A DNA stretch of 64,000 nucleotides from Fimbriosthenelais zetlandica. Its lineage: Eukaryota. Made by a program: the position numbers and the translations under genes. The stretch lies in the NCBI GenBank assembly GCA_977030845.1, contig OZ365115.1, positions 8,432,001 through 8,496,000 of the forward strand, written 5' to 3'. Below, piece after piece: positions 26,801 to 64,000 of the stretch. Positions within the stretch are counted from its first letter, which is position 1, and every line of letters begins with the position of its first letter. The notes under the pieces were generated by a model. The model saw nothing but the letters and a program-made list of their open reading frames with translations, was not told the DNA's origin and searched no databases.

Positions 26801-27172
26801 TATGATCACAGTGTGTATTTACCTCAGTTCTATTGACACAACGGGCAAAGAGATTCACACCAATACAATCACAGGGCTTGATGTGTGTCAATCCTTTGAA
26901 ACTCTAGGTGGAATTTGTTCAAAAGATTATACCTGTCCACATCCAGTCCATGCTGCTCTCTTTCCAAATGTCATTTCATCCCTCATTTATTTTTATAGCC
27001 TCAAAGTAGCAGATAGCTTATTAGCTTTAGACCAAGATTATTATACTTAAGAAAGTGTTTGGAAGAAAGACGAATGTTCGGCGCGGCTGAACAAAGTCAT
27101 TTTCATACACTACGGAAATGTGGGAAAAAAATAAAAAATGTTTAAAATATTTGAATATGGACAGGACATGAA

Positions 27173-28441
27173 ATGGCGTGGAGAAAAAGTGACCTAGTTA
27201 AACATTCAAAAATGGATCTTAATTCGAACATGAATATCCTACGAGCAATGTTGGTGACAGTGATATTTTGCCTATACGCCTATTTGAGTTTAACTTTGGC
27301 AAATTCCACCTATGCACCTTACGGGGACAGTGGATCGTTGTCCTCATCATCGGAGGGAGCGAAGCCTCAGGCTAAGCTTCTAAACAAAGAAAGATTGAGA
27401 ACTCAAAACAACCACCTACCAATAGAAAGAAATCTTCATGATCCTGTGAAAGACATGACACAAATAACACTGAAACTAAGACACTTGGAAGAAATTGCTT
27501 TCAATCTCTCACAACACCACGGTACAAATGCTCCTGATTGTGGAGATGTGGATAAATTTCAATATCCAAACTATCTAAGAAATGTTCCGAACCCACACCC
27601 GTCTACTGGGAAAGGAGGAAAGATTTATAAATTATATATAGAACCAATGGGGCGATTTGGTAATCAAATGTTCCAGGTTGCCTCATTAATTGGCATAGCA
27701 AAAGCTACGTCCAGAGAAGCTGTGATAAGCCCAGTGTTTGACAGTATCCATAGGGTATTTAACATATCAATCCCTGTGGACTACCCACCCTTCGATACAC
27801 CATCCATCCACGAAAACACCTACGCCTCCTACCACCCAAAAGTGTACGAGACACAGCCAAGGGACATGAAATTAATTGGCTATTTGCAATCATGGAAATA
27901 TTTCTACCAATTCAGGACCGAATTCTCAGAGAAGGTGAAATTAAAGACCGATCTGTTAGTGAGAGCAAGCCAGGTGAAACAAAGAGCATGTGAATATTTG
28001 TATAACAGGAATCAGTCGAAAATGTATGTAAATTGCAGGGATATGACATACATAGGAGTTCACATTCGACGGTTGGACATGCATCCAAACTATGTGTCGG
28101 TGCCTACCAGCTACATCCACAAAGCTATGGCATATTTCCGAAGTAGTTACAAAAACACAGTATTTCTGGTATCTACCGATGATCACAAGTGGTGCAGAGA
28201 AGAGCTGAGTGAGACAGATGATGTGTACCTGTTGCCTGTAGATACATTTTTTAACCACTTTGCTGTTTTGACCATGTGTGATCACCATGTGATCAGCGTA
28301 GGAACGTTTGGTTGGTGGGCTGCATGGTTGGCAGGGGGCACTACTGTTTACTATCGTGAGCCAGTGCCTCGTAACTCAATACATTACTGCGGATTTGCTG
28401 CAGAGGACTACTTTCCACCAGAATGGAAAGGAATGACGTGA
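27173..28441 (+). CDS. Alpha-1,2-fucosyltransferase, glycosyltransferase family 11 (FUT1/FUT2-like), single coding exon
   Basis: 422-aa ORF with an N-terminal type-II TM (ILRAMLVTVIFCLYAYLSL). GT11 motifs GRFGNQMFQVASL, GVHIRRLD, FLVSTDDHKWC and CDHHVISVGTFGWWAAWL. The true start may be a downstream Met. Confidence 0.95.
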   Translation: MAWRKSDLVKHSKMDLNSNMNILRAMLVTVIFCLYAYLSLTLANSTYAPYGDSGSLSSSSEGAKPQAKLLNKERLRTQNNHLPIERNLHDPVKDMTQITLKLRHLEEIAFNLSQHHGTNAPDCGDVDKFQYPNYLRNVPNPHPSTGKGGKIYKLYIEPMGRFGNQMFQVASLIGIAKATSREAVISPVFDSIHRVFNISIPVDYPPFDTPSIHENTYASYHPKVYETQPRDMKLIGYLQSWKYFYQFRTEFSEKVKLKTDLLVRASQVKQRACEYLYNRNQSKMYVNCRDMTYIGVHIRRLDMHPNYVSVPTSYIHKAMAYFRSSYKNTVFLVSTDDHKWCREELSETDDVYLLPVDTFFNHFAVLTMCDHHVISVGTFGWWAAWLAGGTTVYYREPVPRNSIHYCGFAAEDYFPPEWKGMT

Positions 28442-44143: not shown

Positions 44144-47100
44144 TCATTTTTGGAGTTGTTCACGGTCAGCCTTTTTCTTTTTGATTCCTATAAAATGATA
44201 AATTCGGGCATAGATAAAGTCAAACAACTCCAACTCATCTTGGATATCTTTATCAGATCGCCATATGATTAAAGTATGGTAATCTAGCACCGCCTGCAGA
44301 AGAGGGATCCACACCCCAGCAATGATCATACCGACAATGACCAGATAAAAAGGTCCCATCACATAGCCTACTAGGGTGGACGAGCAGGCTGAATCGGTAT
44401 CAAAATCCAGCTCCAAAATGGCAAGCCATATAATCATCATGAGTGAGTTTTTCACAGAAGAGAAATCTTCACAGTAAGGACCCAGAAGCAAAACTGCAAC
44501 CAATACATATGACACACATGCACAGGTGATGAAGACTGCAAAAGCCATGATGGAGGGTGAGGCTTTCTTCAGTATAACAGAGAGAATCATGATTCGTCGG
44601 TTAAACTGAAGTAACCTGGCCACTTTGAGGACTGCCACTACCTGGACTGATGCCATGAGATAGAGCAGAATATAGTCCCACATGGCCACAAAGTACAAAC
44701 TAGTATGTTCTGTATTGTTGGCTTCAAACTTTTCACCCAACTGATGCACCAATAAGTAGCGCTTGAAAAAGGCTACCATGGCACTTATGGCCAAAGCAAT
44801 CGTCGCTAAATCTATGTATGTCTCAAACTTCTGGAAGTAAAGACAGTTGTCGCTCATGCGGATGAAAGTTCTGATCTCTCGAATGATGAAGACCAAGACA
44901 AATATGGCATAGAACACCTCAATGACGACTGAGGAAATTTCCACTGATGCTTTCTGGTAATAAAACTGGGATGTCATGACGTTGTTGAATGGTTGAATCT
45001 CACCAGTGCCAAGGAACTCAAAGATGACCACGACAATATTAAACAGGTTAACATTAGGATTGTAGAGGTTTATCTCGAGCAGTATAGATCTGGTATGATC
45101 GTCAATCCAGCCATTGTCTTTTAGACTCGTTAGTTTGGTCTCAGCCTCATCCAGAGTCCTTCCCAGGTTCTGAATAAATCCACCACCAGAATACAATGCA
45201 TGAGCACCCAGGATAGATTCAGTATCAACATCGTCTGATGATTGGAACCGCCAAGCCATGTTTTCTGGTGACGTATTGGACTCGTTTATCCAGCCAACAC
45301 CATAGTCCCCCTTGTCTAGGTATGTCTGGGAATATGATGAATAACAGGTCTTTTCTGAAATCATACTCATTGTGGAAGTCCATGGACATTTCCCGTCACC
45401 TGGATTTGAGGGAGACAAAGGGACAGATCTTCAGATAATAGCATTAGTGGTTGTCATTAAATTGTGAAAAAAAAATGTCAGAAAATGCTACTTGGCTAGA
45501 ACATCTGAAGTAAAAAGCAAGATATGACATCTTTGGAGGACCAGAGTCTGCAATAGATATCAACGATTACCCACCCGGACCCACTCTGTGTTGTCTTATC
45601 CTAGGAACTCCGATCATAGCATTTGTTAGGTCAGACATGTAGACAGCGTTTGGTTCCTCGTCAATGGTGTTGTACAGAGTTGGTAGAACAGTCTCATTCA
45701 GGTACAGCCAGAGAGCATCTGTATCCTGAACCTGGAACAATAATGTAAATTATTACAATAAAACAGGCTCTTCAGATTCTACTTAATTATTAGAGGAGGT
45801 CTCTAATAAATTCTTATGTGACTTATGCCAGAGAAAACCAACATATTGGGTATTTTCTGATTATTATTCTGTCATAATTGCATTAGAATATCGTCAAAAA
45901 TATGTCGGGAGTTTTCGGAATGTGTCAGAGACTCATGTTTCCTGTCATGTCATGTTCCCGCTGACTAGGAGTGTGGATGATTTTGCTATGGTATGTTATA
46001 CCTGCATGTATTGTGGCAGGTGGCGACACCACTTAATACTCTAGGGTATTAACATAAAAAATTAAATTCAATAAAAAAAATATGGATCGCTTACATCACT
46101 AAGCTGTAGATCTCCATTGTAATGGGCCCTCAGAAGTCCGTCTTTCACCGCCTTATTGCTATGGAAAGCGAATGGATGCAAGTTGCCATAGATAAGCGTG
46201 AGGAGGCAGATGAGAAAGAGGACATTCATGAAGATGCTTGCCAGGAGATTCTTCATCTTGCCTTCATTCAATAGCTGTCTTTTAGCTCTTTCTATAGCAC
46301 TAGAAGTAGGCAGGGTGTAAAGTTTTTTGAACTCAGATTTCCAGACTACAGAATCAGTACTTTGATCACTGTGTACATACTCTTCATCTTCACCTGTAAG
46401 AGAGATGTATACCTTTCAAACCGGAGGTGGAATCACTCAAGCCACAAAACTGAGCTTATCGGTACACAATAATATATATATTTTGGAGCAAAACATGTTT
46501 TCAATTTGGATTGAATGAAGGAGGCATGCTCAAGAAAAGCAACTTAAAGGTGCACTGAAGAAAAAGACAAAAATTTAGCAACAATATACTCTTCATTGAA
46601 AAAAAAACGTCTTGCCAAACTTCTCGTCATAAATGGAACCAATAATTATGGCGTGAAACCAAATTACTAATTGTCAGTGGTTTGAGTACGGTACCTGGCT
46701 CGACATTCACTTCCAAATTGACTCCTTCTGTAATTGGTTGGACTGGCCTTTTGAATATCAAAGCAAGAATAGCTGCGAAAGCAAATACTCTTAATGGCTG
46801 AACGATTAGCGCACTCTGACCAAATGTGACGAAGAAGGAGATCAACCATTCCACACTTCTGTCATATCCATACCGGAGACCGTAGAGCATTATCACATAG
46901 GAGCAGAACAGACTAGAAACAATACCAACGAACCAAGCCAGATGAAGACACCACCATGGTAGTCTGAAAAGAGACAAGTTTATATTATATTCTACTTGAA
47001 ATAACGTACATCTTTGCCACTTGCATAAACCAGAATTACTTCTTCAGTGAAAATGAATACATTCCATGATAACATTATACTCATTAGAAAAGTATTTTGG

Positions 47101-50100
47101 AAAGTGACATCACATACTTAAATGGAGATTTAGGTTTCTTCTTATTCACATCAGACTCTGGAGGATAGTTCTGAAAAGAAAATTTCTTTTTTGAGATGAG
47201 GATACAGTCCTGCAAAATATTGGATTTTGAAGAAAGACATTCGGACACAAACTGATTCTAAAATAGATTCAAATCCTATGGATAAGATTCTTCGGTATTA
47301 ATGATATCACTCACATCAACAGATAAGAAGCTACTTTGGATGGACTTGAAATTGGTACTGCTCCCTCCGGCCTGGACTTTGCTCTCTCTGCTTTCTTTGC
47401 TCGCAGATTCGGTCAGTCTTTCTGTGATGTCTTCTGTGATGTCTTCAACCTGTTGGAATACAACATAAAGAGACCATTACATTAAGTGGTTATTTATATC
47501 ATTATCTCTACATACTTGTAAGAGAACATTGTGCTTGGTCCTTGTTGAATCAATATGCATAGAGGCTTATACTTACTCCTGTCTTGATAAAGGAATTATA
47601 TTCTTGAGGTTTTCCTCGTTGGTTAACTCCAAGAAATGATCTCATAGAATTCATGTCAGGGTGTCCATGTGGGTCGGTACCTTCTTGAGTGGACATACCA
47701 ATTCTACAGAAAGAATCAAATCCTTCCGAGGCAAGAGAAATGCAACGACTACCTCCTGGCTGACCAGGTTTGTAGTCTGGTTGTCTGCCAGTAACCTCCG
47801 GACTCAGGAACTTATTCCCTAGTCGTTCTTGCAATGGAATCTGCTCCCTATATTTAAATAGACAGAAAAGATTAGTTTCCAAAGACGGTGCTTGCAGTTT
47901 ACAAGTCCATAGACCTATGAAAGTCATTCTACCTTGGTCTGGTCTTGGTGCCCATTTTCCTCCTATCTTCCGTACTCTGAAAACCAAAATCTCAAATAAT
48001 TTTTAAGCAAAGAGTGTACAATGATTTAGTTTATGTCTTCAATATTCTTATACATGGACATGCAAAAATGTTAACAAAATAATGTTAGCAAAAAAATGAA
48101 TTTACTTACATCAGATTTTGTGGCAGTCATTGAGTCAAAGATATTGATTTTAACAAATGACTTCAGTGTTACGTCGTCTCCTTGATCACTGGAACACAAT
48201 CAATTTTAGCAGATCTATTATTATAAATCAGTTTTCTCTGAGTAGATGACAACCATTTATGCGACAAGTCTACCGTAAAACCTACCTGTCCTGCTCTTCT
48301 TCCAATTCATATTCATTAGAACGTATCTGCAGGAAAATATTTTATTAATATTATTTAATATTATTTCAATCTATATAAATTGCATACACTTTCATATAAT
48401 TTGTATTTCCAATCCTTAGACTTAATATCACCAATCTGAACTCATACTCACTTCTGGTGATTGACGGTCACTGGCCAATTTACTGCCTTTAGTTCTATGT
48501 TTGTATCCATCTTTTCCATGAAAGGAATGGACGATATCTGAGCTATCCCTCCTTGCTAGATCCCCCTCCTTCCTTTGGGGTAGGTCTATTGCATAGAAAG
48601 AATCAAATTCGTCTGATATGCTGGCAGCTCGTTTTCTTTCCACCGGTTTCAATTTTGCCTTTTCCGGAACAACAGTCTTTTGAGGTGTTGCTTTTGCTGG
48701 ACCAGACTGCTTTATATTATGTTCACTTTGATATTCTTCTCCTGGATGAAAGCCCTGAAATGGAGCAGAGTCTTTAGATCACATTTCCAGTACTTTTGAG
48801 TAAATGTCAATGGCTTTCGATGATTTACCTCAACAACTAAATTGTCTGGAGTTGTTAGTAGAATGGCAGGGGATTGTATGGAGTGATGATTGTCTTGTCC
48901 AGTGTCCATAATGGTTTTTGAAATGCCCTTGTTGCTCAGCAACTCATCCGATGGCCCGAACAGGAAATTCAAAATACTGTGGTAAAGAAATGTTCCAATT
49001 TAACAGCTTCATAAAATCATGGGAAATTTTCACAGGAAATTTCTAAAATACTCTATTCTTTATAATTTTACCCGTCAGATTCCAGAAGGACCTCACTTTC
49101 CAACGTCTCATTTGAATCGTTCTGGAAATGAAAAGGACACAAATTAAAATCTATACATATGTACATGTATACAGACATGGTACAGCTAAGGAACAAATAG
49201 ATGCTGTCAATTCGAAAAAAAAGACTCACATCTGATGAAGGATATTTCTCTTTTCCCATCATGTCATGCCTTGACGTCTGGCTTTGATTGGTTCCTAAAG
49301 TCCTTTACAAAAAGGTGCACTTTGTCACTTACTTTGTGAATAATATGCTTTCAATGACTTCATATGGAATCCTTTCATAATCTTACCACCAATATGAAAT
49401 TCTACAATAACGATTACTGAGGTTATCAATAAATAAACAAATTACTAAGATTACCTTGAACACACAATAAACTATATGTGAAACAAGAAAAAAACTTACT
49501 TATCATCCTCATCTTCATCCAAGTAAAAAGACTTAAAGGTTGTAGAACTTGTGGTTCTGGCATTCGTGTCTTTCTCAAGCCCTGTTTTTAATTCGAAGGC
49601 TTCCTTGCTTATGGAATCTCTAGACTCCTGGCCTGGTCTGACACCACAGTTCCGGAAAACCCAAATTAAGATCATGTTAATTGGTATCGTAATCAATGCA
49701 CTCTCAACACCAATCAGAAATTGAGTGTAGGAGAAGGTATAAGCTCCAATACCGAGCTGGTGGGCAGGATCTGATACTTGTCCATAGAACATGAGATTGG
49801 TCAGCATGGCTGTGGTCAGGAAGCACAGCGCACAAACAAGTCTCTGTGGTCGAGTGAAGACCGTCTGAGGTGGTCTAGCAAATATGCTAATCCACAGATG
49901 TTTGTCTCGTATTTCCTATCGATACAGAAATGTATTTAAGCATTTTGTATTTTACAAGCACTGCACTTTAGAAAACTGTTCAGCGTTTTACGTTTTCGGT
50001 CAATACTTGAAACAATTCAAGCAAAGTGTCAGAAGCTGTATAACATTCATATATATTTCAAATACATGGGCTTACCTGACTGGCCATTGCATTAAACACA

Positions 50101-53100
50101 TAGCCAAATTTCTGGTCAGCTTTTGATGCTGATGCTGGCAAAAAACGATATATCCCAGTGGCCCCATCCAAAGGTGAAAGCCAGTTGTTACATACGAAGT
50201 ACCAGGATGTTCCTTGCTGAATATCCTTCACCATGATTTGCGTGAGAAACCTGTTGATACAAAAAGATTGAGATTATTGTTCTTTCAATTCATTAGGATT
50301 TTGTCGGGTTGGCCCATGGGTGAAAGGTACTGGCTGAGATGATGATATGAGTATCATGAAATACAGGGTTTTAAATGTATTGGACCTTCCGTATTCAAAA
50401 AGTATAGGCATAAATTTATGATATTCATGGAATAGCTGCTGTCAATGCTATGAGGTAAAAGTCTAGACTTACCATGAAGGGAATGTCCCTGAGCAATCAT
50501 GCCATACAATCAGTGTTTTTAGTTCCCCCAGACAAGCTGGGGTGGTTAATAAGAACCAGTCCTCTGCTCCGGTTTCGAACCTAGGACGTTCAGGATCATG
50601 GAGTATATGGATATCGCTATTAGCACGAGAACCTCTGATGAACATTGACACATTAGACGTGGTGCCTGCCTCTCCCCTCCATCCCGTCTGTACCATTACC
50701 AGGTAGCCATATGTGGCAGCCTCTGGGTTGTCTTCAAGAACAACCACTCCAAGCTGTTGTTAATGAATGATATGAGCAATTATTTATTCAAGTTACATGG
50801 TATGGCTGAAGGGGTTGATATACATTGGTGGGAAACGCCTGCCTGCCCCGTGAAGGAAGGCCAAAGAAAACTAAAGCTCCCACTCCAAGATGAAACTGAA
50901 CCTCGACCCCAAAAAAACTATTTGAGAAAGTCGATCAGCTCCCACTAATGTGAATCACAGGCTTTCGTGAAATGATACAGTACTTATAATGTGAAAGCTA
51001 AATGTATATGGATCGAACTACAACTCTTGGAGCACATACCTTCTGTTGGTCCGTCCTGTCCTGTCTCCGAGCCCAGACTGTGAGGAGAATAAAACTCACC
51101 CAGACCACGACCACCAAGCTAACGACCACAGGGTTACTGAAGAAGGTGGAGAACAACTTGATGTCCTTGATCAGGTCCACCTCATTAGGAATGACCAGGA
51201 AGCTGGCTGAGAATGTAGACAAGTGCTTGCAGCTGCACATCACTTCAGATGGTGAACTTTGAGACATAAGCTGTCAAATAGATAGATTCCATTGAGATGT
51301 TACAAATAGAATTTTGGGGTATACACCGGATAGGAAACTCAAATCGAAAGTATTAGCTCCTTCATCTCAATTTTTTAACAAACAAAAAATGCAGCATAAT
51401 TACCAAACAGCCATCCGTTTTCCAAACTCCTAACACAGGATCCCAATCCAGACATGCTCCAAGGAAGACTTCACTGATTATTGTCATTTGCCCATCAACA
51501 AATTCATGGTCCGCCTCTCCATGCACAGCGCTGCTATGCAGCAAGCCAACATAGACTACTTGTGTCTCAGAGTCATTACTGCTGTGTCCAAACAGGCCAA
51601 GTTGGTCATTTAGAGAAATAATGGCTTCAATATCAATGAAAGATGATATGGACACAATATTTTGCGCATTGTATCCAGAAGTGCCATCTATTGCGTCTAA
51701 TGCCCACAGATCGTTGCTAGTATTGCCGTTGAATTCTGTGATATCTGGACGCTGATTAACAGATGCAATGAGAGTGAGATTGACATCCGTTCTTGATAAA
51801 TTAAGGAACATCCTGAATGTTCTGCCTGGAGGTAAATCAAATTTGAAGTAAACGGGACTCTGCTTAGATAAGGTGTCCTCCTGAGTGTTCAGATCGAGAA
51901 TTCCTATTGACGGAAGGGAATCTGTGGCAACTGCAAAGGAAACGTTGAGAATCTAAACAAAAGTTGAATATAGGATATATGATATAGGATATGCTCTCAC
52001 AATATGAATCTCAGTTACAGAGTTTTTGGAAGGTTTTATAGGAGATGGCAGTATACACTTGCATAATGTCTTGCAGCGATATCTATATTTTATTTTAGCA
52101 GCTATCTTGCAATTGTGAGGCTGTTCTTGCCGCCAAGTGAAACCACATGGGCCACAGGCCGAAAAAAGTCATTACTTACATGTTGGTCTCATGTACATTT
52201 GAAGCAGATAATCTGTGATATTGATAGGAATGGGTTGACTGTCCGGAAGAGTCAGGTCTATACCAACCACAGCAGTATTCAGCACTAAAGTAGAATTCCA
52301 AGCAAAGGGATTTTCTCCACTGCTGTAAGACTGAAGACAAGAATAGAGCTCACATTTTATCTTGAGTTGCATATCTACATACTTTTCCTTGGAAATTATA
52401 TTTTTTGATTTACAGACGACCATGGAAATTGGTTTTCACCAGCAGGGCTAGTTCAATTGAAATTAAACTAGCCCTGCTGTAAATGAACTTGTCTTTGGAT
52501 CTGCTCTTTACCTTAACACCGATGCTCGTGTTAGCCGGCCAACCAGTTGCAGACAAATAAGCTTGGATCGTTTCATTCACGTTAATGAAACCTTCTGAGA
52601 GGTCAATGGCCCCATTGTCATAAGTTGAACCTCCACCAGGGACGAGGGACAGTGGCAGACCCTCACTGCTGTTGGCTTTTTGTACAGAGAGGGATATGCT
52701 GCTCAGATTGAAATCAATGGGTTCAGCGTCAGAGTCCAGAACGTATAAAAACCCGTCTGCAACTGCCTCCAAAGTGCCATACATGCTAGTGACTATTACT
52801 TTAACCTAAAAGACGACAAGTGACTTAAGTTATATGGCCTGGATTGAAAAGAAAATATCAGTTTTCTAGATACTACATTGTCTCAACCGAATGGATAAAA
52901 AAAAAAGTATACCTTATCTTCTAGAGCTTGCTTTGTTGCTGTATCTTGACTTTGGTTACCACTGAATCCATCTTTAACTAAGCTGCCAATCTCTGCCTGA
53001 GCAAGAGCATACACTCTCGATGCACTGGACAGGATTGTCCTTGAACGAAATTGGAATACACCCTGTATACATTGATCACATTTGGATACTCTCATTGTAA

Positions 53101-56100
53101 AATAATATGATGAACTGTGGATAATACATACTTGCCTAAATCTAGGGAAACGTCGTCTTCATATTCAGTCTCATTCATTAAATCCTTGAATGTTTGACCG
53201 AAAGATTCAGCAGTTTGCATGGCATCAATCTGAAGTTTCAGTGAAATTTCATGAAAAATATAATATTTTGCAGATTTCCATGTGCTATACATCAATGGAA
53301 TGCTCGTAATCTGCTTTATAAGAATCTGCAACTAACTCGAAATCCATTTTTGCGACTTTAGACTCATTTCATGAAAACATTACACAAAATTTAATGTGAA
53401 GTGAAGTACCTGGGTATCGGAAGTGAGTAGCTCAGGTTGTGCGGTTATTAAATCCAAAACTCGACCAGTGGCATTGAGGATCTCAAAATCTGTAGTATTG
53501 ACCTTTTCCATAGCCACGATGGCCATAGCCATTAACTATCAAAGATACAGATGGATCAAAGAGACAATTTTACTCTGAAACATCATATAATGGCGAACTA
53601 TATAGAAGAGTTTCTCAAGGCCCCCATTTTAAAGTTGGCTGGCCTTTTCCTTTAAATGATTTTTAGTGGGAATTATTTGGCATATTCTGGAACAAGTTCA
53701 CAGCTGAGTTCAGCTGATGGAAAAATATATTACGAACCTGCTGATATTCATTTAGAGACCATGCTACTTGGTTATCATTGATTTTTCCCAGGATAAGCTC
53801 CACGCTATTGATGGTAGCTGCAGGAAGATAAAAAAAACCAGGAGAGTTAGCAGATTAGGAACAAAGTATTCTTTGCATTAAGGAAGGTTTTCAGACACCA
53901 AGTCATTTAAAGATTTAATTAATAATAACAAAAGATATTACCTATAACGTCAGCAAGGGGATTATCAAACACATCTGTTATATTTTGCATCCTCATAAAG
54001 TAAAAATCCATGTCATGAGGAGGACCAGTGGGCGAAACCTAGATGAACAAAGACATTGAATTTTACATTTTGCTAATTTCTAATTTTACAAAGGAACCTT
54101 ACATCTCACCTCTATTTTTTTCTCCCTCCAACTCTTGAGTGTACTCTCTACTGAGATATTTCGCTAGGCCTCCTTACTTCTCTTTTTGTTGTTTTTTTTA
54201 CCTCAAATACTATATTACATCCTAATATACATCATTTAATGTTGATAAAGGCAGGAAAGTCAGTTTAAAATGTAATATATTGCCTATACCAGGATTTCAA
54301 GCGTTTCATTGCCGATTAGGCCTTGGCTGGCAAACCTCTGTACAGTGATGGTTACAGTCGTGTTAGCCTCTGGTTCACCTTTCACCTCCAGCAGGAGAAA
54401 TGGTGGCGTGATGCTTCCTCCGTCATATATTTGATTCGATATACCTGAATCTGAAGGCAGCATTTATCATTATTAGTACAGTATAGCCTGTATAAGAGCC
54501 CCGATACATTGGATATGAGCCCACTCCAACCCCTTTTTCCGTGCGCTATACCCAATATACAAGATGTGAAATGAGACGGAATCTTATTTTTAACATGCTA
54601 GAATTGTGAATTTGTCAGTCATTGGTTACTTTTATGAAGCTAGTTAAATGCTTACCAGTGGCGAAAACGAACACATGATTGACAACGCCTGGTGAATCAA
54701 CACATGTGATGAAATACTGTGCTAGAATGGCTTCTCCATAAGTCGGTTCCACTTCACACTTCTTCATACAAGAGACTTAAAGAAGAATAAAAGGCATATA
54801 TTATATTATTATTGGTCCCATTTTGGGGAAATAATTATTAACATGGCAATGGAATAATCGAATAATGCAATTACATGCATGCCATATATGGACACTGAAA
54901 TTTAATTAAATTTTAATTACAGGCCTATGATGATGTCGGTAAAATTATAATGTGACCACCATTTCTAATGCCTTTTAATGAATCAAGACTTTTAATATTA
55001 TTTAGTGATGTTTAATGACTGTTAGGAACTTTGAATTATCAACTATAAAAAATTCACTTACAATCACGGTAGCAGACGAGTGGGCCTAGAGTGAAGGCAG
55101 CCATTTCATGCCACCACATGACATCACCAACTGACAGTGATCTGATTGGGAAGGTGTCAACCTGCTTTAGGCTTATAGTCTCAAAATGTTCATCAGTAAC
55201 CGTTTTTTTCTTACAGGTGTCTGAGCATTGGCAACCTAAAATAGGATCAGTTAAAATATGTGATTAACAGAAGAGAGAAAATGAGTACCGGTAGTTCTAC
55301 CAAGAAATATCTGATGGTCAAATCAAGGATACTGGTACTATCCTTGGTCATACCACACCCATTATCATTAGTCCTAGATTTTTAGTGCATCATTTGGAAA
55401 GGGACCCTTGAATAGTAGAGTTGTTAACTTGTTTAACCTCCAGTTAGCAATTTTCAGCTATTTCCGGGTGATTAGTGAAGCCTCTAATGAAAAGTACTGG
55501 AGTCAAATATCTTATTCATAGGATAATTGGTCTATATATTACATGTGTTTCCAATCATTTGACATTTTGGCAGTAAATTTTGAAACTGCTAGGTATTAAA
55601 ATCAAGATACTTAACTCCTGGTGGGCAATTTTCAATCATATAATCCACAAAGTTTATCCTGGTCGAGTCATAAGCAGTCCAATACCAATAATCCAATCTG
55701 TTGCCAACACATTGTAGATCGAAAGAATATGAGCAATTTGAAAATTGCAGCACTATTTTTTCACGAACCTGTAGATAAATTAGTATTAATTGGCAGAATA
55801 TAGGTCTAATAATTGGTGACAAAACTCATTTCACATAAATTATAATTAGACAAGTATCTAAGTCGTTTGTAGCTTATATAGATATTAAAAGCAGACTTTG
55901 TATACTACCAGCGAGTAATAGTATTTCAACCAATAAATTAAAATTTTTCTATTTTTCTTGCCTCTTGATAGGTCAATCCCGGGTAGGTGATCTGAGTGGT
56001 GGCGAGATCGGAGACGTTGGTGTAGTAACCACAGATAGCCTTCCTCACTTCACTGTCATGGTGAAAGATGTTCATGGTGCTGTCACTGAAGTCACATGTG

Positions 56101-58321
56101 ACAGTGATGTAGGTTCCATCATTGACAGGATCTATGAGGTAATCACCTTTCTCAGTGTTTCCAAGGCATTGATAGTGGTCAGCACATGAACTGACAAAGG
56201 CATCGGCTGAAATAGAAAGAAACTAACAGGTAAGTTATGAATCATTGATGGCCAAATAATTTATTTCATTTAATAATTTATTAAAATAATTTCGAAACAA
56301 GATCTTCATGACTAGTCTACATGTTATGATGTATAACACTGTATTAGTAGCCAAGGCTGTAGGTCTAGCATTATAGTCTTGGACCTATTTATTAGGCTTA
56401 TATAATTTGAATAGTTTTAGTGAAAGATATTGCAAATTTAATGTACTAAAATGATGAAACTGCTTGGTATTCAAATCACTAAACTCCTGGCGGGCAATTT
56501 GCGATCAATCTAAATTAATATAATTTAATCATGTATACTAGCTATACAAATGACATGGTAGTTAAGAGAAAACCTTCAAGTGTCAAATATTTAACTTTTA
56601 AAGATTTTAAATATTTAAAAAAATGTAGGCAGGCTTATTTTAACATTTATAACTTACCGTACTTGCCGGTGTATAACGCGCAACTTTTTGACCTGGTAAT
56701 TGGCCAAAATCGGGGCCTGCGCGTTATACACCGGAGCGCATTATATATGGATTTTTCTCACATGGTGACTGCCAAATTCGGTCTAAGTTCGGCGGGACCA
56801 TGCTTGTCAGACTTCAAAGGGACGCATGGTGGGAGGCAGCCGACTATGTCCACGGATTAGTGGGATGCTAATTAGTCCATACAGAAAAGCTATGTTGCCT
56901 TGAGATGGCTATTGTGTCTGGGAGGACGCTGTCTGGGGTGGGAGAAACGGGTATACAAATTGCGCGTTATACACCGGTGCGCACTATATATGGATTTTAC
57001 TTGAGAGGTAGGGGGGTGCGCGTTATAGTCCGGAGCGCGTTATACACCGGCAAGTACGGTACTAATACTGCCAATAGCTTACCCGAGTAAAAGAGGAGAT
57101 GTAGAAGCTCTGGAAACCAAAGTACAAGCACATGTAAGGGAGACAAAGGGTAGGACAGAGGGAATTGAATCCAGGATCAAAGGTGACTGGTCGAAGGATA
57201 TAATCATATCCTATAACAGACACCCACCCCTTTGCACTCTCCCCACAAGTCATGATGAGAAAGCTTCGTAGTGCCTAGTGGATTGGTTGGTGGGGAGTGG
57301 GGGTGGGGGGGGGGGGGGGGGGGTGTAAAGATATATAACATTAAAAGGGCAGGGGCGGATGGGTGGAAGGGTGTAGGGGAATGGTTTTTTTTGGGTTTTT
57401 TTCACACTCTTGATTACTCAAGTTTTCGTATGATTTTCAGCTGGGGGCTCTTTCTATGTGCATTATATCACTATGTTAGGCCTACTTACCGTATATCAAA
57501 CCACCTTTTGTCTCTCGTCCCAATCCCTTATAACAAAGATGAAGATTGGGAGGGGGTACGGTACCGTAGCAGGCTTTCACACCTCGTGCCTCAATCACAG
57601 TTTGAACTATACCTGTGGTGTGGGGTGGTGGGGGCTGATCTGTTAATTACTGTAGGCTAATTAGCCGAAATTGCGTAACTACTATAAAGCCAGTAGGCTC
57701 CTCTATGCAGGTGGGCAGGTTTCGTGGCGCAGGTGGGTTGTAGGTTCAGAAAGCCAAGGGCGGCAAGGGTGATCTATGCCAACACGGGTTCGAATCCGGG
57801 TAGCGACCGAAGCATTTTCTTGGTAAAACCAGTGAAGCGTGAAGCTAGGTAAAAGCATAGAACTGCAGCAGTTTGGTTGGACATCAACACAATAGGTAGG
57901 ATAGGAAGCCCCACTCCCAAATTGGCCAAATGGCATAGGCCTATAAATAGTATAATAGACATAGATCTATTTAGTGGGAGGGCGGGAGTAAAAAGTATTT
58001 ATTTAAAAATAAATCTCCAAAAGGAAGGAGACCTCCTAAGGCCAGGGCAGGGCCCCGAGGCTGCACTACACCCATAGCCATACTGGCCCATACCATAGGC
58101 ACTGACCACTGTGTCCAGTTTCAGTGACACGCCCATCAACATCACTGGCAATGACATGACAAAAATACAATTTATGAATGGACACAGAGAGAAATTGATT
58201 GTGAAAACCCATTCTTTGTCCCCCTGGCCATACCCGGTTTCAGATAAACTATAATACTGGAAAGAGTTCACTCACCAAGGCAGACTAACAGCCATGAGCT
58301 GGACCCTGTAGCTGACCCCAT
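44144..58321 (-). CDS. Polycystin-1-like (PKD1L/REJ family) protein: signal peptide, CASPR-type fibrinogen-like domain, REJ fragment, GAIN/GPS, PLAT, polycystin channel domain
   Basis: First exons 58276-58321 and 58094-58144 give MGSATGSSSWLLVCLVMLMGVSLKLDTVVSAY. Then 55962-56206, 55618-55768, 55062-55235, 54656-54775 (CEVEPTYGEAILAQYFITC, REJ), 54290-54450, 53942-54038, 53738-53817 and 53410-53535. Further exons encode NPFAWNS (~52.3 kb), GPS CSCKHLSTFSASF (~51.2 kb), PLAT YLVMVQTGWRGEAGTTSNV...WHDCSG (50.5-50.75 kb), RPPQTVFTRPQRL (~49.85 kb) and LPWWCLHLAW (~46.95 kb). The 1285-nt last exon 44144-45428 has YSGGGFIQNLG and DDHTRSILLEINLYNPNVNLF. Some internal junctions (47-49 kb, 53.1 kb) are not resolved. 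Confidence 0.9.
56655..57061. mobile_element. Tc2/pogo-like MITE, copy 2, in an intron of the PKD1-like gene
   Basis: Same 407-bp length, TIRs and TA flanks as 7780-8186. About four substitutions seen by eye. Confidence 0.9.
57305..57323. repeat. 19-nt poly(G) run within a G-rich tract
   Basis: Directly visible. Flanked by further GGG runs, so it is G-quadruplex-capable. Confidence 0.8.
57722..57860 (+). mobile_element. tRNA-derived SINE-like element, second diverged copy
   Basis: TGGCGCAGGTGG (A-box-like), GGTTCGAATCC at 57787-57797, then AAACCAGTGAAGCGTGAAG as in the 31.8 kb copy. Confidence 0.55.
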
Positions 58322-59903
58322 GTCTTCAAGAGGCCGCCATTAAACCACGTGACAATGTTGTTATTACTAGTGTTCAAACAATCCGCCAGGGGCAAATATT
58401 TTCCCGCCACTCGTACCATATGGCCTGGTCTTCTTTTCCCTAACTTTCCTTCACTAGAGGAACATATCCAAACCTTCGTTAACTTAACTTAACACCCATA
58501 TTAAAAATGAAAATAAAAACAGCGAAATATCTTAAATCATGATTTTATTAAAACTGCCAAGACACTTAAATTCAAGAAACACACATACAGGTGCATTGTG
58601 CTGGTTTTACACCCTATAAAATTATCAAATATTAATTACATCGCATAGTAAATGTTTGTGAAGATTTATTGTTAGTTTCAGCTCTCATTTATAATATCAA
58701 AAGGTTCCATTCTGAAATGTATAACATGCCTATACATTTATACTACGGTATATAGGTAGGCCTATGGTACATGATAAGGGATCATTTTTCAATAAGTTAC
58801 TGTATATTATAATTATTGACTCGTTTCCACCACATCATTACACCCATAAAAGTTATAGATTATCCACGCGTTTACACACAGAGCGGTAAGAAAGATATGG
58901 CTTTTTAGCAAAAATAGCACATTACCAAAAGCTAGCTTTATCTAGGCCTAGTCTACATTTATCACTATACCGTACCTTAATCAGAAATCACATTCAATAT
59001 TAAATTTGCAAGACATTAATTCTTTAGTGGCTCAATAGCTGAAAAAACTTTAATCAGACTTCTAAGATTCCGCCTATCTAGCCTACTCCTGTTTTTCCAA
59101 TTTATATTTAGGTCTATACATAAATATAAAGACTACCGGTACCATTTCAATGTAGACCTACTTCCCTGCGGTGGTCCAGAAAAATTAAATGGCCTCACTA
59201 GCAGAAATTGCAGGAGAATTTTGAAAATTTCACATTGATCTGGGCAAAATATATAGGCTTAGTATTGGCCTAGTAGATTGAAATAGCTCGGATATCCAAC
59301 ACATTTTCCGTCACATTATACATACATACACATAGGCTTTACTATAGCTTAAATTGACCGTATCACATTACTCCGAAGGCATTTAATTTGTACAAATCTT
59401 TTTTTGTAAATTGACAGTCCATGTATTCACAAAAAATAATCAGAATATCCCATCTCGGTTAATATAATGAATTAAGGCATATTATATATACACAGTTTCA
59501 ATCAGAAAAGTGTAGTATGGATAAGATTCAAGCGCCATTCGAATTATTTATATAGAATCTGCATAAAAGGCACACCTATACCGATTTCACCTATACCGAA
59601 TCATGATTAAATGAATATTTCAAACATATAATTTATCTCTGCTCTTATGCAATATTTCTCTAGATACATGAGATATACAACACATAATTTAATCACTTTT
59701 TGTGGCTCATACTTGATGGTATATGTAGGTATTATAATTAGAGAATTCAATTTGACTAATCTAAAGACTTTTTTCGTTGTTTACCTCCTAATATTTTGGG
59801 GATGAGATTGAAAAGAAGGGACTCATTTAAAAGAATTTTTACAGTTGCCTTTCTTTGAGTTATGTGCGTTGTAAAGATTCTGGGGTGAACTTTAAAATGA
59901 TCA

Positions 59904-62900
59904 TCAACCTGAGTAGGACTGGTCCCTCTTGAGAGCAGAGCGAAGGCAGCATGCGGTAACGAACCCGATAATCTGAAAGTATCCAGTAAAGACATGCATA
60001 ACAAGTCAGAGACATTCAACAGAATTAGGTGAAATTCTGAGTGACACAGCTGTTTGCTAAAGAAATAAGACATAAATTAAAATTAAAGAATTAATTGAGC
60101 ACCATGATAATATCTACACAAAAAATAATCCCGAGGGGAGGGTATCGAAATTTTCAAAGGAATGGATGGGGGCGGTGTGTTAGAGGGTCAGCCGTGTGGA
60201 AAACGAGAGGTGGTAAAAAAAAATCAATTCTTGAGCGACCAAAATTAATGTCTGAATAACATAGACCTACCTGAATGGCCCCTACAACAAAGCCAACGAT
60301 AAGCAGGATGAGAGACTGCCTCTTGAACCACTTCTCCAGAGATGAATAGCAACCCTATACACAGAAAACAAAAAATCATTATTTTTTATAAAGAAACAAC
60401 TCATGATTTGAACCGAAACCAAATCCAGCCTTTGGTGATTAAATAGTTTGAGAATCTAAAAAAATATAGGTCTTACAGTGGTCTGTAGATAAGAACTTCC
60501 TTCCCTCTTGTCCTTGGCATCTGTCTGACACAGTACAGCGTCAATGGGCCGTGGATCCTTAGGGTCAGCATTGGCCAACTTGCAGCAAGAGAGAGGCACA
60601 TACTTGTCTGTGGAATTGTGCTGGAAATCAAGAGAGGAGACTTTCAGTAAGGACATAACAATACAGGGATCCTCCTCTAACCCCTACCTTTGGGACTGAA
60701 CAGAAGTGGTCTATATAAGGAGGTGGTGATTTAAAGGGGTATTTTAAACATGGACGAAGCAAACTGTGAGTTGGACAAGACAAACATGGTCGGTTTAAGG
60801 GAGTGGTCGGTTTAGGGGTACTCGATTACAAATGCGGATAAGGGGCTGTGTTTTTATTAAACAAGCATCCATTTTAATTCACCTGAATAAAAACTGCTTC
60901 TATTTGGTCCGTTCTAAATAGAGAAACTCGTAAAGAGAGACCGGACGAGGATATGACTCTGGGGAGGGGTCATGTCGACCAAGTCTCTCGTCCCAATCAC
61001 TCTGCTAACCACAGCACCATGAGCTCCAAAAGTCACAGTAACAGTAGTAGACAAGCATAGCCCCAGCGTGGAAAATTAATGAAGCGCCTGACATTATAAT
61101 GTGATTGGCATGAAGCTCTAGAGACTTTACACCAGCCAGGTTTAGGGACGACGGTAGTGACAAATGAATTGAGACATGGGGAAATGTGGTCCTTCGTTAT
61201 CTGCCGAATACATGTACATGTACATTCACTGCAACATTCAATATAAATTTACTAAGTTTGTTGCATGTATTAGGCCTATGTAGCCATAATGAATGCTCTT
61301 AATATTGTATGAATAATAAGGACTATACCTTGGTGGCATTATGCCATTCACTGTTCCTGTAGTCCTCATAGCTTAAAGCTCCACAGCAATGCAACTGGAT
61401 AAAAAAACATAATGAAAGGTTCAATTATTTTGAATTATTTTCAATACGGATATAAGACCAATAGGCCTATAATAATTGTTAGTTGACTGTTGTGCATATT
61501 AAATTATAATAATCTTACCCGTGTCTGAAGGAAATCCCATGCCACACCAGCTCCTGAATTTTTCCCATACTCTTCCTTGACCTGCCTTTCCATGGATTCT
61601 TGGAGATGATCTTCTACCTGTAACGTTTTCAATATACAATATATACGAGTAGGCCTACCGGTACATGGACCAAAATAGACATCTAAATGTATAGACATAC
61701 CTAAACAATATAGATTCGGAGTGGAAGTTCTTTTGATCAGTCGTTTTTAAATTGGGAGGGGAAATAATTATGACTGCATAAATAATTTGGATAACTAAGA
61801 CATACCCTTTGCTTGTAGATCACAGCTAAGACTGCTGCCACTATTTCTGCTGCCATGACAATAAGGAGTAAGAAGGCATACTGAAATGAAAAAAATTCAT
61901 TTCAGAACCATCTGACGCTTTGTTAGAAGACATCCAGGAACTGAAGGAGCAAGAATTAAACCCTGCAGAAAGGAACATTAAATGAAGGTAAAATTTGAAT
62001 ACTCTATTATGTGAACTAAAGATTGGAATTTCATTACAAATATTATATCACATGTAGAAGAAATTAATGTGTCCCTCTTAATGTTAAATTGTTGTGAAAT
62101 CGACTTTCTGCAAATAAACCATCAATTATGAATGAAGGTCAAGTTCATGTGATAGATGGATGATGAATATAGAGATGTTTACAAAATACAACTCGCTTAT
62201 TTGCTTTGGATACACAGCCATTATCTCCACATTCACTCGCATATAGTCCACGGATTTCCCATGAGAATATTAGACATTTGGCTATCAGGCTTACGGTCAG
62301 TTTTTCTCATATCATTCCAGTGTATTACATTTGTATTACATTTGTAAGCGCCGGTCCCATAAATGAATCGAAATGAAAATCACTAGAGCAATTCATATTT
62401 AGAAAACTAATGCAAAGCTCTCCAAACTTAATAAATTTGTCTGCCTTACGGACTCCCATGGGAAATCCCACATCATAGAAATTTCGCGATTTTTGTCATG
62501 AAATAGGCCCCCAGTACAGGTACATTGCCTAATGAGCTCTATTTACACTGGTCTCTTTTTTATGCCTCAGGGCAAGGTTCCAATCAGTAATTCTATACTC
62601 TCTAGATAATTCATTTACCGGTCGATTCACGTCTCTACATGTTTGATTCAATTAGTGGACAAATAGTTATATTGGCTTCATATAATTCAGTAATTTCCAG
62701 GTGAACCAAATATCACATAGGATTGCCATAAGATACTTTTTTCCTTTATAACTTTTGTAAGCATGCATCTGCCTTCTATGGTCCTATTTGTTTCTTACAA
62801 TATTATGTTGAAAATACCCCTTTATAAATGTTTGAATTTAGAAATGTTGGCCATTCCCAGAGGTGGTCGCACTAGGGGAGGAACACTGAGCTCGATATAA

Positions 62901-63710
62901 TTCTACTTCAATAAAAGCCCTTTAAAAGGGTACGTCTTTCCTAAGTATTTAAATATGGCGGTTTTATACATGGAATATAGGAACATTTTAGCCAGATCTT
63001 ATATGAGCTACTCCATGTAATTCATTAAAGCACGCTATAACCCTGCATGAGTGTGACAGCAAGGCCGAATACTCAATAGCCCGCGCTGGCACACGAATGC
63101 AGGGCTAGCATGATTTAGTGCATTTAGTACATTAAATACTGACGCCGGCATTGTAATTGGCCATTTTACATTATCAGAGACTTTGCGTGTAGTAAATCAT
63201 GTTAATTTCTGTCAGATCTTAAGTAGCCATCTCAAGAGTTGCAAGGTTTTTCTAAATTAAAGTACTTTTAAACAGTTTATGGTGGTCTGAGGCCCACTTT
63301 AAACTGTGAAAAAAACAGTTGCATGGATATCAGTTAAATTATCAGGATTTCAGCCACTGTTTTTCAAAATTTAAGATAGGATGTGGGGTTGGTGGTCTGA
63401 CTCCAAATTAAAGGACTTAACTTTAGAAAAAACTTGCGAACTTTTGAGATGACACCTAACAGACATACTTGTTTTAACATATAATTTAGATTCATCTCAC
63501 CATGAAGAGGAGACATTGGGAACCTCTGAGAGCACCACAGCAGCCGAGGAATCCCACCACAAACACAAAGGCTCCCACCACGATGAATAGCCAGGCGGCA
63601 TGGCTGATGAGATCATCTGATTGGTCAATATTCACCACTAACAGATAGTTGACTATCGTCTCGTCCAGTTTCATCCATAATCCAATGCCAAATACTCCAC
63701 CTCCCGCCAA
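59904..63710 (-). CDS. Tetraspanin (copy B); first coding exon lies beyond the window end
   Basis: Exons 63501-63710, 61806-61880, 61519-61617, 61329-61394 (LHCCGALSYEDY), 60477-60620 (VPLSCC), 60271-60354 and 59904-59972, all with phase-0 GT-AG introns at the same positions as copy A. Confidence 0.92.
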
Positions 63711-64000
63711 CTGCAAACAGAAGAGAGGTATGGTAATAAGTTACAGATACTATTTTATACATCAGAATTATTATAAAATGAACAGAAAACAATCTGAATT
63801 AATTTTTGAGAGTCTGAAAGTGGTGGGGTCTGACCCCTTCCCCCAACACACACAGACCCATATATCCGACCCAGAAGGCCCCCTGATCCATTTTAATTCC
63901 TGGCTGGGCAAGAAAATCATGCAGATGAAAACTTGAAGCCAATTTACAAACACATTTTCTGAAGCTGTGCACATTGAGTAACAGGTAAAACCAAGCATGA

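What the first reader, a model, noticed from the sequence alone, without database searches (positions are those of the whole stretch)
55062..58321. Polycystin-1-like receptor with an N-terminal CASPR/neurexin-IV-type fibrinogen-like domain
Seen: right after the signal peptide, three exons encode SSCADHYQCLGNTEKGDYLIDPVNDGTYITVTCDFSDSTMNIFHHDSE…ITYPGL…SNCSYSFDLQCVGNRLDYWYW…GCQCSDTC…FPIRSLSVGD…FTLGPLVCYRD, and then splice into REJ sequence. Established: this pattern (YxIDP, VxCD, HDSE, CxQ/YxxxxxC, LGPLxC) is the fibrinogen/COLFI-like module of contactin-associated proteins. Described PKD1-family N-termini use LRR, WSC, C-type lectin, SUEL, CUB, EGF or PKD repeats. Inference: a possibly undescribed, short-ectodomain polycystin architecture with a novel ligand-sensing domain coupled to GPS cleavage and a channel domain.
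Basis: partly seen in the sequence, partly recalled or inferred. Interest (0 to 1): 0.7.

Follow-up and report, generated by a model that had tools for sequence, protein, structure and literature searches.

The report
Polycystin-like receptor with collagen/fibrinogen-like head
A multi-exon invertebrate gene for a polycystin-1-like receptor-channel seems to start with a domain of the fibrinogen / collagen-propeptide / CASPR type. This would be an unusual but not revolutionary domain swap. It is not proven, because one splice junction is irregular and no RNA data could be obtained.

Summary
Downstream lies a clear 11-TM polycystin-1-like gene with a GPS motif, PLAT, polycystin/TOP domain and PKD channel, and its stop is at 44146-44144.

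Tools recognise exon 2 as the N-terminal subdomain of the fibrinogen-related/COLFI superfamily, but always below family thresholds. Another species has a 45%-identical exon with the same boundaries. Tools do not recognise exons 3 and 4. They line up only by eye with human CNTNAP2 and COL1A1 sequences printed in two preprints (eight aligned cysteines, about 24% identity).

Three of the four junctions fit: e1-e2, e2-e3 (GC donor) and e4-e5. The three exons form a 1-1 symmetric cassette. The e3-e4 junction has no canonical in-frame splice pair. If intron 4 is retained, a stop follows two codons after the domain. Exon 1 can also splice in frame directly to exon 5. No RNA or DNA runs were listed, so the fusion is likely (about 0.55) but unproven.

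Pfam did not detect REJ. No paper describing this architecture was found, and InterPro could not be queried. The Ciona s-/v-Themis pair is a suggestive parallel. Verdict: probably a new variant of a known kind, of moderate interest.

The parts
58276..58321 (-). Exon 1: ATG plus 15 codons, a weak signal-peptide-like start (MGSATGSSSWLLVCL), with a phase-1 GTGAGT donor
   Evidence: It is the best of 7 ATG/phase-1-donor candidates in 56207-60200 by hydrophobicity and donor score. An alternative lies at 58157-58094.
55962..56206 (-). Exon 2: N-terminal subdomain of the FBG/COLFI-like domain (SC..C..GDYLIDP..VTCDF..HHD..TTQITYPG). Phase-1 acceptor, phase-0 GC donor.
   Evidence: Pfam COLFI E 0.065. 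Homolog P0002/L001 has the same exon ends. PDB profile hits are all FReD or COLFI. Atlas neighbours are GON/COLFI/Fibrinogen_C. Codon-usage z 2.4.
55615..55768 (-). Exon 3: middle of the domain (C-x7-C..RL..YWYW..PPG). Phase-0 acceptor; no canonical donor in the phase that e4 needs.
   Evidence: ORF. By-eye match to CNTNAP2 C-x7-C..RL..Y.WW. No tool recognises it. Codon-usage z -0.1.
55062..55235 (-). Exon 4: C-terminal part of the domain (C.C...C ... FPI..SVGD ... LGPLVC). Needs phase 1 at its 5' end. Strong GTAAGT donor in phase 1. If unspliced, it reads two more codons and then TGA.
   Evidence: By-eye match to CNTNAP2 (C.C, P..VGD, GPL.C..D) and COL1A1 (LPI..VG..GPVC). Not recognised by Pfam, PDB or Atlas. 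Codon-usage z 1.9.
54656..54775 (-). Exon 5: first exon after the cassette. Its phase-1 acceptor is compatible both with e4 and with e1. It has no start codon with a signal peptide of its own.
   Evidence: No ATG-initiated exon lies between 55057 and 54776 (read).
51404..54450 (-). Exons coding about 630 aa of glycosylated ectodomain in the position of a REJ domain. REJ was not detected.
   Evidence: Gene model. No Pfam hit at E<=10 on the pieces. 20 N-x-S/T sequons in the ectodomain.
51040..51270 (-). Exon with the C-terminal half of the GPS motif (C.C.HLSTF) and TM1
   Evidence: Pfam GPS E 0.0023, profile positions 24-43 of 45. TM1 hydropathy 2.76.
50076..50753 (-). Two exons coding the PLAT/LH2 domain
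   Evidence: Pfam PLAT 3.4e-10 for profile 1-79 and 0.0055 for profile 80-106.
44144..45731 (-). Last two exons: polycystin (TOP) domain, six-TM PKD channel domain and stop codon
   Evidence: Pfam Polycystin_dom 2.2e-26 and PKD_channel 1e-23, plus 3.2e-5 for the preceding exon. PDB: PKD2 1.5e-29, PKD1L3 3.7e-27, PC1 1e-19. P0008 from ERR14368249 is 55% identical.
56449..56507 (-). 64-bp relic copy of the e3/intron-3 boundary inside intron 1. It also reads GGAGTT.
   Evidence: blastn, 80% identity, E 5e-10.

Best explanation
The locus 58321-44144 (minus strand) is one gene for an 11-TM polycystin-1-like (PKD1L/PKDREJ-type) receptor-channel of about 2,200 aa. Its mature N-terminus is a roughly 190-aa cysteine-rich globular domain of the fibrinogen-related / fibrillar-collagen C-propeptide (COLFI) superfamily. 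Its closest known form is the 'fibrinogen-like' domain of contactin-associated proteins.

The domain is carried by three exons that together form a phase 1-1 cassette, inserted between the signal-peptide exon and the rest of the ectodomain.

Inferred working model: the head domain binds an extracellular protein or glycan ligand, or oligomerises the ectodomain. The roughly 630-aa stalk in the REJ position ends in a GPS motif that is cleaved at HL|S, leaving the N-terminal fragment attached. The six C-terminal TM helices, together with the TOP domain, contribute one subunit to a heteromeric cation channel with a PKD2-like partner. The solved complexes PKD1L3-PKD2L1 and PC1-PKD2 work this way.

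Shown here: the exons, their phases, the downstream domains, and the superfamily of the first ~55 residues. Inferred: that the cassette is spliced into the receptor mRNA, the fold of the whole domain, and every functional step.
For: - PLAT, Polycystin_dom and PKD_channel are above Pfam cut-offs. The C-terminal half of the GPS motif has E 0.0023 and the sequence reads C.C.HLSTF.
- The PDB search gives PKD2 1.5e-29 and PKD1L3 3.7e-27. Hydropathy shows about 11 TM segments.
- The junctions e1->e2 (phase 1/1), e2->e3 (0/0) and e4->e5 (1/1) are compatible. The model has no in-frame stop over 2,245 codons.
- e4 ends in a consensus GTAAGT donor. There is no start or signal peptide for the receptor between e4 and e5, nor in e5.
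- The boundaries and phases of e2 are conserved in another species. The same sample also holds a 55%-identical channel exon.
- Superfamily evidence for e2: Pfam COLFI; all 11 PDB profile hits are FReD or COLFI at the homologous position; hhalign 88.7%; Atlas neighbours.
- The whole domain aligns colinearly by eye with CNTNAP2 and with COL1A1/COL3A1 C-propeptides. Eight cysteines align with CNTNAP2.
Against: - No transcript evidence exists, because no sequencing runs were listed.
- e3->e4 lacks a canonical in-frame splice pair. Canonical GT-AG splicing gives a frameshift and a stop 20 codons into e4.
- e3 has no coding-like codon bias.
- Pfam, PDB and Atlas do not recognise e3 or e4.
- AlphaFold2 on e2 alone gave pLDDT 42.
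- Pfam did not detect REJ.
- e1 is only the best of several possible first exons.
- Retaining intron 4 gives a stop two codons after the domain, as in a stand-alone secreted protein.
Confidence: 0.55

Rival explanations
1. The cassette is defective or decaying in this genome. Under canonical splicing, the e3/e4 junction shifts the frame, so cassette-containing mRNAs are non-productive. The working receptor would then be made by splicing e1 directly to e5, which is in frame (both phase 1). That would give a PKDREJ-like protein without any head domain.
For: The only GT donors at the end of e3 give phase 0 or 2 and lead to stops in e4. e2+e3+e4 total 573 nt, a multiple of 3, so skipping keeps the frame. 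The codon usage of e3 is indistinguishable from non-coding ORFs.
Against: All three exons keep open frames and all domain cysteines. e2 and e4 score as coding. The 80%-identical old relic of the boundary already has GGAGTT. So the irregular junction is old, yet the exons have not decayed. This argues that the junction works as it is.
Confidence: 0.2
2. Exons 1-4 make a separate product: a secreted FBG/COLFI-like protein of about 208 aa. It ends two codons after the last cysteine when intron 4 is not removed. The receptor uses e1->e5. The locus would then be a ligand-like/receptor-like pair sharing a promoter. [quoted passage not shown]
For: Read-through of e4 gives ..VCYRD-C-K-stop. FReD and COLFI domains are normally C-terminal (established knowledge). 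Three ATTAAA signals lie within 100 nt downstream. The Themis precedent is described in PMC9265791.
Against: A perfect GTAAGT donor sits exactly at the phase that e5 needs. The cassette has no start of its own other than e1. The ATTAAA count is not unusual for this AT-rich stretch. In Ciona the nested gene is on the opposite strand and is a canonical fibrinogen domain. The e3/e4 problem affects this product too.
Confidence: 0.15
3. The N-terminal exons do not form a fibrinogen/COLFI-type domain at all. The motif matches are chance hits in a cysteine-rich region, and only about 35 residues resemble the A-subdomain.
For: No family model reaches its threshold. e3 and e4 are unrecognised. The 1.84-billion-protein search gave only two true relatives.
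Against: Every weak hit from three independent methods falls in the same superfamily and at the homologous position. Motif order and cysteine spacing agree with CNTNAP2 along the whole length, including C-x7-C and the terminal GPL.C..D.
Confidence: 0.07

Closest known systems
PKD1-like 11-TM proteins with a channel domain (human PKDREJ, PKD1L3; sea-urchin REJ3)
   Same: GPS motif before TM1, PLAT after TM1, about 11 TM segments, and a TOP/polycystin domain plus six-TM PKD channel at the C-terminus. The ectodomain is short (~850 aa), like PKDREJ. PDB match to PKD1L3 is 3.7e-27.
   Different: The described N-terminal modules are C-type lectin, SUEL, EGF, PKD repeats, WSC and LRR (PMC1934368). 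None is fibrinogen- or COLFI-like. REJ was not detectable here by Pfam.
Fibrinogen-like (FBG) domain of contactin-associated proteins (CNTNAP2/CASPR2)
   Same: Colinear by-eye alignment of about 185 residues at about 24% identity, with eight aligned cysteines. Shared motifs: Y.IDP, V.C, HD, TQ..Y, C-x7-C..RL, Y.WW, PG..C.C, P...VGD, GPL.C..D (sequence).
   Different: Here there is an extra cysteine giving a COLFI-like C-x5-C at the start, and the ~25-aa CNTNAP2 insert with two cysteines is missing. There are no laminin-G or EGF neighbours. The domain sits at the N-terminus of a channel-type receptor. No statistical test was possible.
Fibrillar collagen C-propeptide (COLFI, PF01410)
   Same: It is the best Pfam model for e2 and its homolog. 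The start is the same C-x5-C...G.Y.IDP...V.C, and the end is P-I...VG...GP.C near the terminus. PDB profile hits include 5k31 and 4ae2.
   Different: Scores are below the gathering cut-off. There is no collagen triple helix upstream. The domain is not C-terminal. The middle part resembles CNTNAP2 more than COLFI.
Ciona s-Themis / v-Themis self-incompatibility pair
   Same: A PKD1-like receptor gene (REJ, GPS, LH2, 11 TM and a PKD channel in s-Themis-B) is physically coupled to fibrinogen-like coding sequence located after its first exon (PMC9265791).
   Different: In Ciona the fibrinogen-like gene is separate and on the opposite strand. Here the exons are on the same strand, in frame and without a start of their own. 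The domain is not a canonical fibrinogen domain. The genome looks spiralian, not tunicate.

Membership tests
PKD1 / polycystin-1-like family | GPS motif immediately before the first TM helix | tested here: met
   C.C.HLSTF is read directly. Pfam GPS gives E 0.0023 for profile 24-43 of 45 on the exon holding its second half; it is below the cut-off because the motif is split by an intron.
PKD1 / polycystin-1-like family | PLAT/LH2 domain after TM1 | tested here: met
   PF01477, 41.1 bits against a cut-off of 23, E 3.4e-10. It continues in the next exon.
PKD1 / polycystin-1-like family | Eleven TM helices, with a polycystin (TOP) domain and PKD channel in the last six | tested here: met
   PF20519 2.2e-26 and PF08016 1e-23. 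Hydropathy peaks are consistent with 11 TM. PDB matches to PKD2, PKD1L3 and PC1.
PKD1 / polycystin-1-like family | REJ domain in the ectodomain | tested here: inconclusive
   No PF02010 hit at E<=10 on any exon piece. The spliced ectodomain could not be submitted. Some family members have partial or no REJ (PMC1934368).
COLFI (PF01410, fibrillar collagen C-terminal domain) | Pfam score above the gathering cut-off (26.2 bits) | tested here: inconclusive
   e2 alone scores 13 bits and the homolog P0002 scores 22 bits. The whole spliced domain has no reference and was not scanned.
COLFI (PF01410, fibrillar collagen C-terminal domain) | Lies C-terminal to a collagen triple helix | tested here: not met
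   The domain follows the signal peptide directly. There are no Gly-X-Y repeats anywhere in the model.
Fibrinogen-related domain (PF00147) | A-subdomain: C...G.Y.I.P...V.CDM with its disulfide | tested here: met
   hhalign gives 88.7% probability, E 2.6e-6, to the FReD units of P0005. Profile hits to ANGPTL3, FGL1 and Ang2 fall at their residues 3-55, E 0.07-0.5.
Fibrinogen-related domain (PF00147) | B/P subdomains (GGGWT..QRR, FWLG, C-terminal binding pocket) | tested here: not met
   No PF00147 hit at E<=1. hhalign alignment stops after 36 columns. The hallmark motifs are absent on direct reading.
CNTNAP-type fibrinogen-like domain | Colinear cysteine and motif pattern along the whole ~190-aa domain | tested here: inconclusive
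   By-eye alignment to the CNTNAP2 sequence printed in 10.1101/605378: about 24% identity and eight aligned cysteines. No score or E-value could be computed.
GON domain (PF08685) | Match to the GON model | tested here: not met
   Only ESM Atlas neighbours (score 0.93) carry GON. There is no Pfam GON hit at E<=1 on e2-e4.
Themis-type nested ligand/receptor gene pair | Independent fibrinogen-like gene on the opposite strand in intron 1 of the PKD1-like gene | tested here: not met
   The exons are on the same strand, begin with a phase-1 acceptor, have no own ATG, and continue in frame into e5.

The most novel reading that the evidence does not exclude
The locus may be a single-promoter version of a Themis-like recognition pair, outside tunicates. 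Alternative processing would yield three products. The first is a secreted FBG/COLFI-like protein (e1-e4, with a stop two codons after the domain if intron 4 is retained). The second is a bare PKD1-like receptor-channel (e1 spliced in frame to e5). The third is the cis-fused form. This would point to an old and recurrent functional partnership between PKD1-like REJ receptors and fibrinogen-superfamily ligands.
Probability: 0.07. Interest if true: 0.75.

Novelty: new variant of a known kind. Interest (0 to 1): 0.35.

Why it matters
PKD1-like receptors are thought to get their ligand specificity from interchangeable N-terminal modules. For most of them the ligand is unknown. A member whose whole variable head is one compact FBG/COLFI/CASPR-type domain on a short ectodomain would be a simple system. 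It could be used to ask what such a head binds and how binding is passed through the GPS site to a PKD channel.

It would also be a second, independent case of PKD1-like and fibrinogen-superfamily sequences being coupled at one locus, after the Ciona Themis pair. The CASPR-type domain itself has no assigned function, so a new context for it is informative.

The value is limited until a cDNA shows that the exons are really joined.

Tried and rejected
- **RNA or DNA reads.** Two run searches (e2-e4 and the last exon) listed no runs, so read laying could not be used.
- **Whole-domain Pfam, PDB or AlphaFold.** The spliced protein has no reference, and long letters may not be typed. A joined reference is not accepted, and a PDB chain id is not accepted as a protein. 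These steps were left out.
- **AlphaFold2 on e2 alone**, with a 2-sequence alignment, gave pLDDT 42, which is unusable. No fold search was run.
- **Search of 1.84 billion representatives with e2.** It gave 7 hits. P0001, P0003, P0004, P0006 and P0007 are spurious repeat or bias matches. Only P0002 and P0005 are real.
- **Word-indexed searches.** The last exon gave 4 hits and none was full length. The e2 profile returned only P0002. An architecture 'ladder' was therefore not feasible.
- **Metagenome scan** with the e2 profile found no relative.
- **Contigs of the homolog** (L001, L004) end 730 nt after e2 and hold no e3 or e4.
- **Ways to rescue the e3/e4 frame.** A U12-type reading of intron 3 (donor GTATCT, TTTTAAC 14 nt before the AG) gives phase 2 and a stop. 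An indel in the A7 run of e4 would put the C.C motif out of frame.
- **Canonical alternative found by my exon-chaining script.** A 37-nt micro-exon at 55805-55769 could replace e3, but it deletes the part that matches CNTNAP2. I judged it an artefact.
- **Other micro-exons** that the script placed in intron 1 lie in repeats and were discarded.
- **Earlier scan notes** gave nothing relevant.

Full report
**What is in the sequence.** The finding lies on the minus strand.
- Exon 1 (58321-58276) is an ATG followed by 15 codons with a short hydrophobic core and a GTGAGT donor in phase 1. Among all ATG-started segments with a phase-1 donor between 56207 and 60200 it is the best candidate, though not the only one.
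- Exon 2 (56206-55962) starts at a phase-1 acceptor and ends in phase 0 at GAG|GCAAGA, a GC donor.
- Exon 3 (55768-55615/6) starts at a phase-0 acceptor.
- Exon 4 (55235-55062) ends at a consensus GTAAGT donor in phase 1.
- Exon 5 (54775-54656) begins at a phase-1 acceptor, and the frame runs on.

**The downstream gene.** An exon-chaining script, corrected by hand, gives a stop-free model of about 2,245 codons ending at TGA 44146-44144. Several small exons in the long cytoplasmic loop (49.4-47.3 kb) are uncertain. Pfam on exon pieces gives PLAT (3.4e-10), Polycystin_dom (2.2e-26) and PKD_channel (1e-23). It also finds the second half of a GPS motif (E 0.0023) on the exon that reads C.C.HLSTF just before TM1. 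The last exon matches solved PKD2 (1.5e-29), PKD1L3 (3.7e-27) and PC1 (1e-19) structures. Hydropathy shows about eleven TM segments. The ectodomain is only about 850 aa and carries 20 N-glycosylation sequons. Pfam did not detect REJ on any piece at E<=10, so 'REJ sequence' is position-based, not shown.

**Is the N-terminal cassette real?** Exon 2 certainly is.
- A search of 1.84 billion representatives returned one close relative, P0002 (45% identity). It also returned a multi-FReD/laminin-G protein, P0005. The other five hits are repeat artefacts.
- P0002 comes from a genomic Logan contig of another organism (run ERR14368249). There the exon has the same phase-1 acceptor and a canonical CAG|GTAAAA donor exactly where this window has its GC donor. 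This supports the long form of exon 2 and the GC-AG intron.
- The same sample also holds a 55%-identical copy of the channel exon. The contigs are too short to link the two.
- I scored codon usage with a table trained only on downstream exons. e2 (z 2.4), e4 (1.9), e5 (1.7) and e6 (2.3) fall in the top few percent of 299 control ORFs. e3 is indistinguishable from controls.

**What domain is it?** Tools only see the first ~55 residues.
- Pfam's best model for e2 is COLFI (E 0.065). For P0002 it is COLFI at 1e-4, extending to profile position 108. Both are under the 26.2-bit cut-off.
- A two-sequence profile against the PDB gives eleven weak hits (E 0.07-1). All are angiopoietin or FGL1 fibrinogen domains or collagen I/III C-propeptides, aligned at their own N-terminal subdomain.
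- hhalign to the FReD units of P0005 gives 88.7% probability over 36 columns and then stops.
- ESM Atlas neighbours of e2 are GON, COLFI and Fibrinogen_C clusters.
- Exons 3 and 4 alone are recognised by nothing.
- AlphaFold on e2 alone failed, with pLDDT 42.
- The spliced domain has no reference, so I could not submit it to Pfam or AlphaFold. That step was left out.

Instead I searched the paper library for short end-motifs. This found the full human CNTNAP2 sequence (bioRxiv 10.1101/605378) and human/mouse COL1A1 and COL3A1 (bioRxiv 10.1101/777490).

By eye, the window's domain is colinear with the CNTNAP2 fibrinogen-like region along its whole length. The shared elements, in order, are SC...LG.T...Y.IDP, V.C, I..HD, GY, TQ..Y, a C-x7-C pair followed by RL, Y.WW, PG then C.C, a further C, P...VGD, and GPL.C..D. 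That is about 24% identity with eight aligned cysteines. CNTNAP2 has one extra ~25-residue insert. The first 21 residues are even closer to COLFI, with the same C-x5-C and G.Y.IDP. The end also resembles the COLFI terminus.

Canonical fibrinogen hallmarks (GGGW, FWLG) are absent. The whole-domain call is a visual alignment without a statistic.

**Is it part of the receptor?**
For:
- Three of four junctions are phase-compatible.
- e4 carries a perfect donor in exactly the phase e5 needs.
- Neither e5 nor the 280 nt before it contains a start or signal peptide for the receptor.
- e2+e3+e4 total 573 nt, a 1-1 symmetric cassette. This is the classic form of a shuffled extracellular module.

Against:
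- e3->e4 has no canonical in-frame junction. The two available GT dinucleotides give phase 0 or 2 and lead to stops in e4. The in-frame joins would be TT-AG/GT-TA (giving PPGG-C.C) or GA-AG (PPG-C.C).
- A 64-bp, 80%-identical relic of this exon/intron boundary in intron 1 has the same GGAGTT. So the oddity is old and not an obvious assembly slip.
- The frame of e4 that needs phase 1 is the one carrying the C.C motif shared with CNTNAP2.
- If intron 4 is retained, the protein stops two codons after the last cysteine.
- e1 can splice in frame straight to e5.
- No sequencing runs were listed for either query, so none of this could be settled.

**Context and novelty.** The single-exon fucosyltransferase elsewhere in the window has its best named relatives in molluscs, annelids and brachiopods, at only 35-42% identity. 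There was no self hit. The genome is therefore probably a spiralian without annotated close kin. This explains the thin comparative data.

The sea-urchin and human PKD1 families use C-type lectin, SUEL, EGF, PKD repeats, WSC and LRR at the N-terminus (PMC1934368). Full-text searches combining polycystin/REJ/PLAT/GPS/PKD_channel with fibrinogen or COLFI found no description of this architecture.

The only link in the literature is the Ciona self-incompatibility system. There, fibrinogen-like v-Themis genes sit in the first intron of PKD1-like s-Themis genes on the opposite strand (PMC9265791). Here FBG-superfamily exons occupy the same place, but on the same strand and in frame. That parallel is suggestive, not evidence of shared function.

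**Verdict.**
- The PKD1-like identity is certain.
- The FBG/COLFI/CASPR-type domain is likely (about 0.8).
- Its incorporation into the receptor is more likely than not (about 0.55).
- The claim that it is undescribed was not checked against InterPro.

It is best classed as a probable new variant of a known kind, of moderate interest, pending a cDNA.

Noticed in passing
window 56655-57061 and 7787-8179: Two copies of a ~400-bp MITE-like element with 27-nt perfect terminal inverted repeats (TACCGTACTTGCCGGTGTATAACGCGC). One lies inside intron 1 of the polycystin-like gene.
   Followed up: partly
window 56449-56507: A 64-bp relic copy (80% identity) of the exon-3/intron-3 boundary lies in intron 1, upstream of exon 2. 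It may be the remnant of an older duplicated cassette. No relics of e2 or e4 were found.
   Followed up: partly
window 27155-28438 (+): Single-exon ORF of 428 codons with a GT11 alpha-1,2-fucosyltransferase domain (1.3e-37). The best named relatives are Haliotis, Lamellibrachia, Sinanodonta and Lingula at 35-42% identity, which hints at a spiralian genome.
   Followed up: partly
window 63495-63740 and 36319-36609 (-): Exons of two tetraspanin genes flank the polycystin-like gene on the same strand.
   Followed up: no
window 12600-16500 (-): A long array of ~160-bp tandem units gives repeated open frames (NQSI.VQQSL...EATISFDINPF...). It looks like a satellite or tandem repeat rather than a gene.
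   Followed up: no
window 55961-55960: Intron 2 uses a GC-AG splice pair, while the homologous intron in the other species (L001 3786/3787) uses GT. Together with the irregular intron 3, two of the first four introns lack a GT donor.
   Followed up: partly
window 57300-57335 (-): A run of about 25 C residues lies in intron 1, next to a tRNA-like (GGTTCGAATCC-containing) SINE-like stretch at about 57700-57830. ARAGORN calls no tRNA there.
   Followed up: partly
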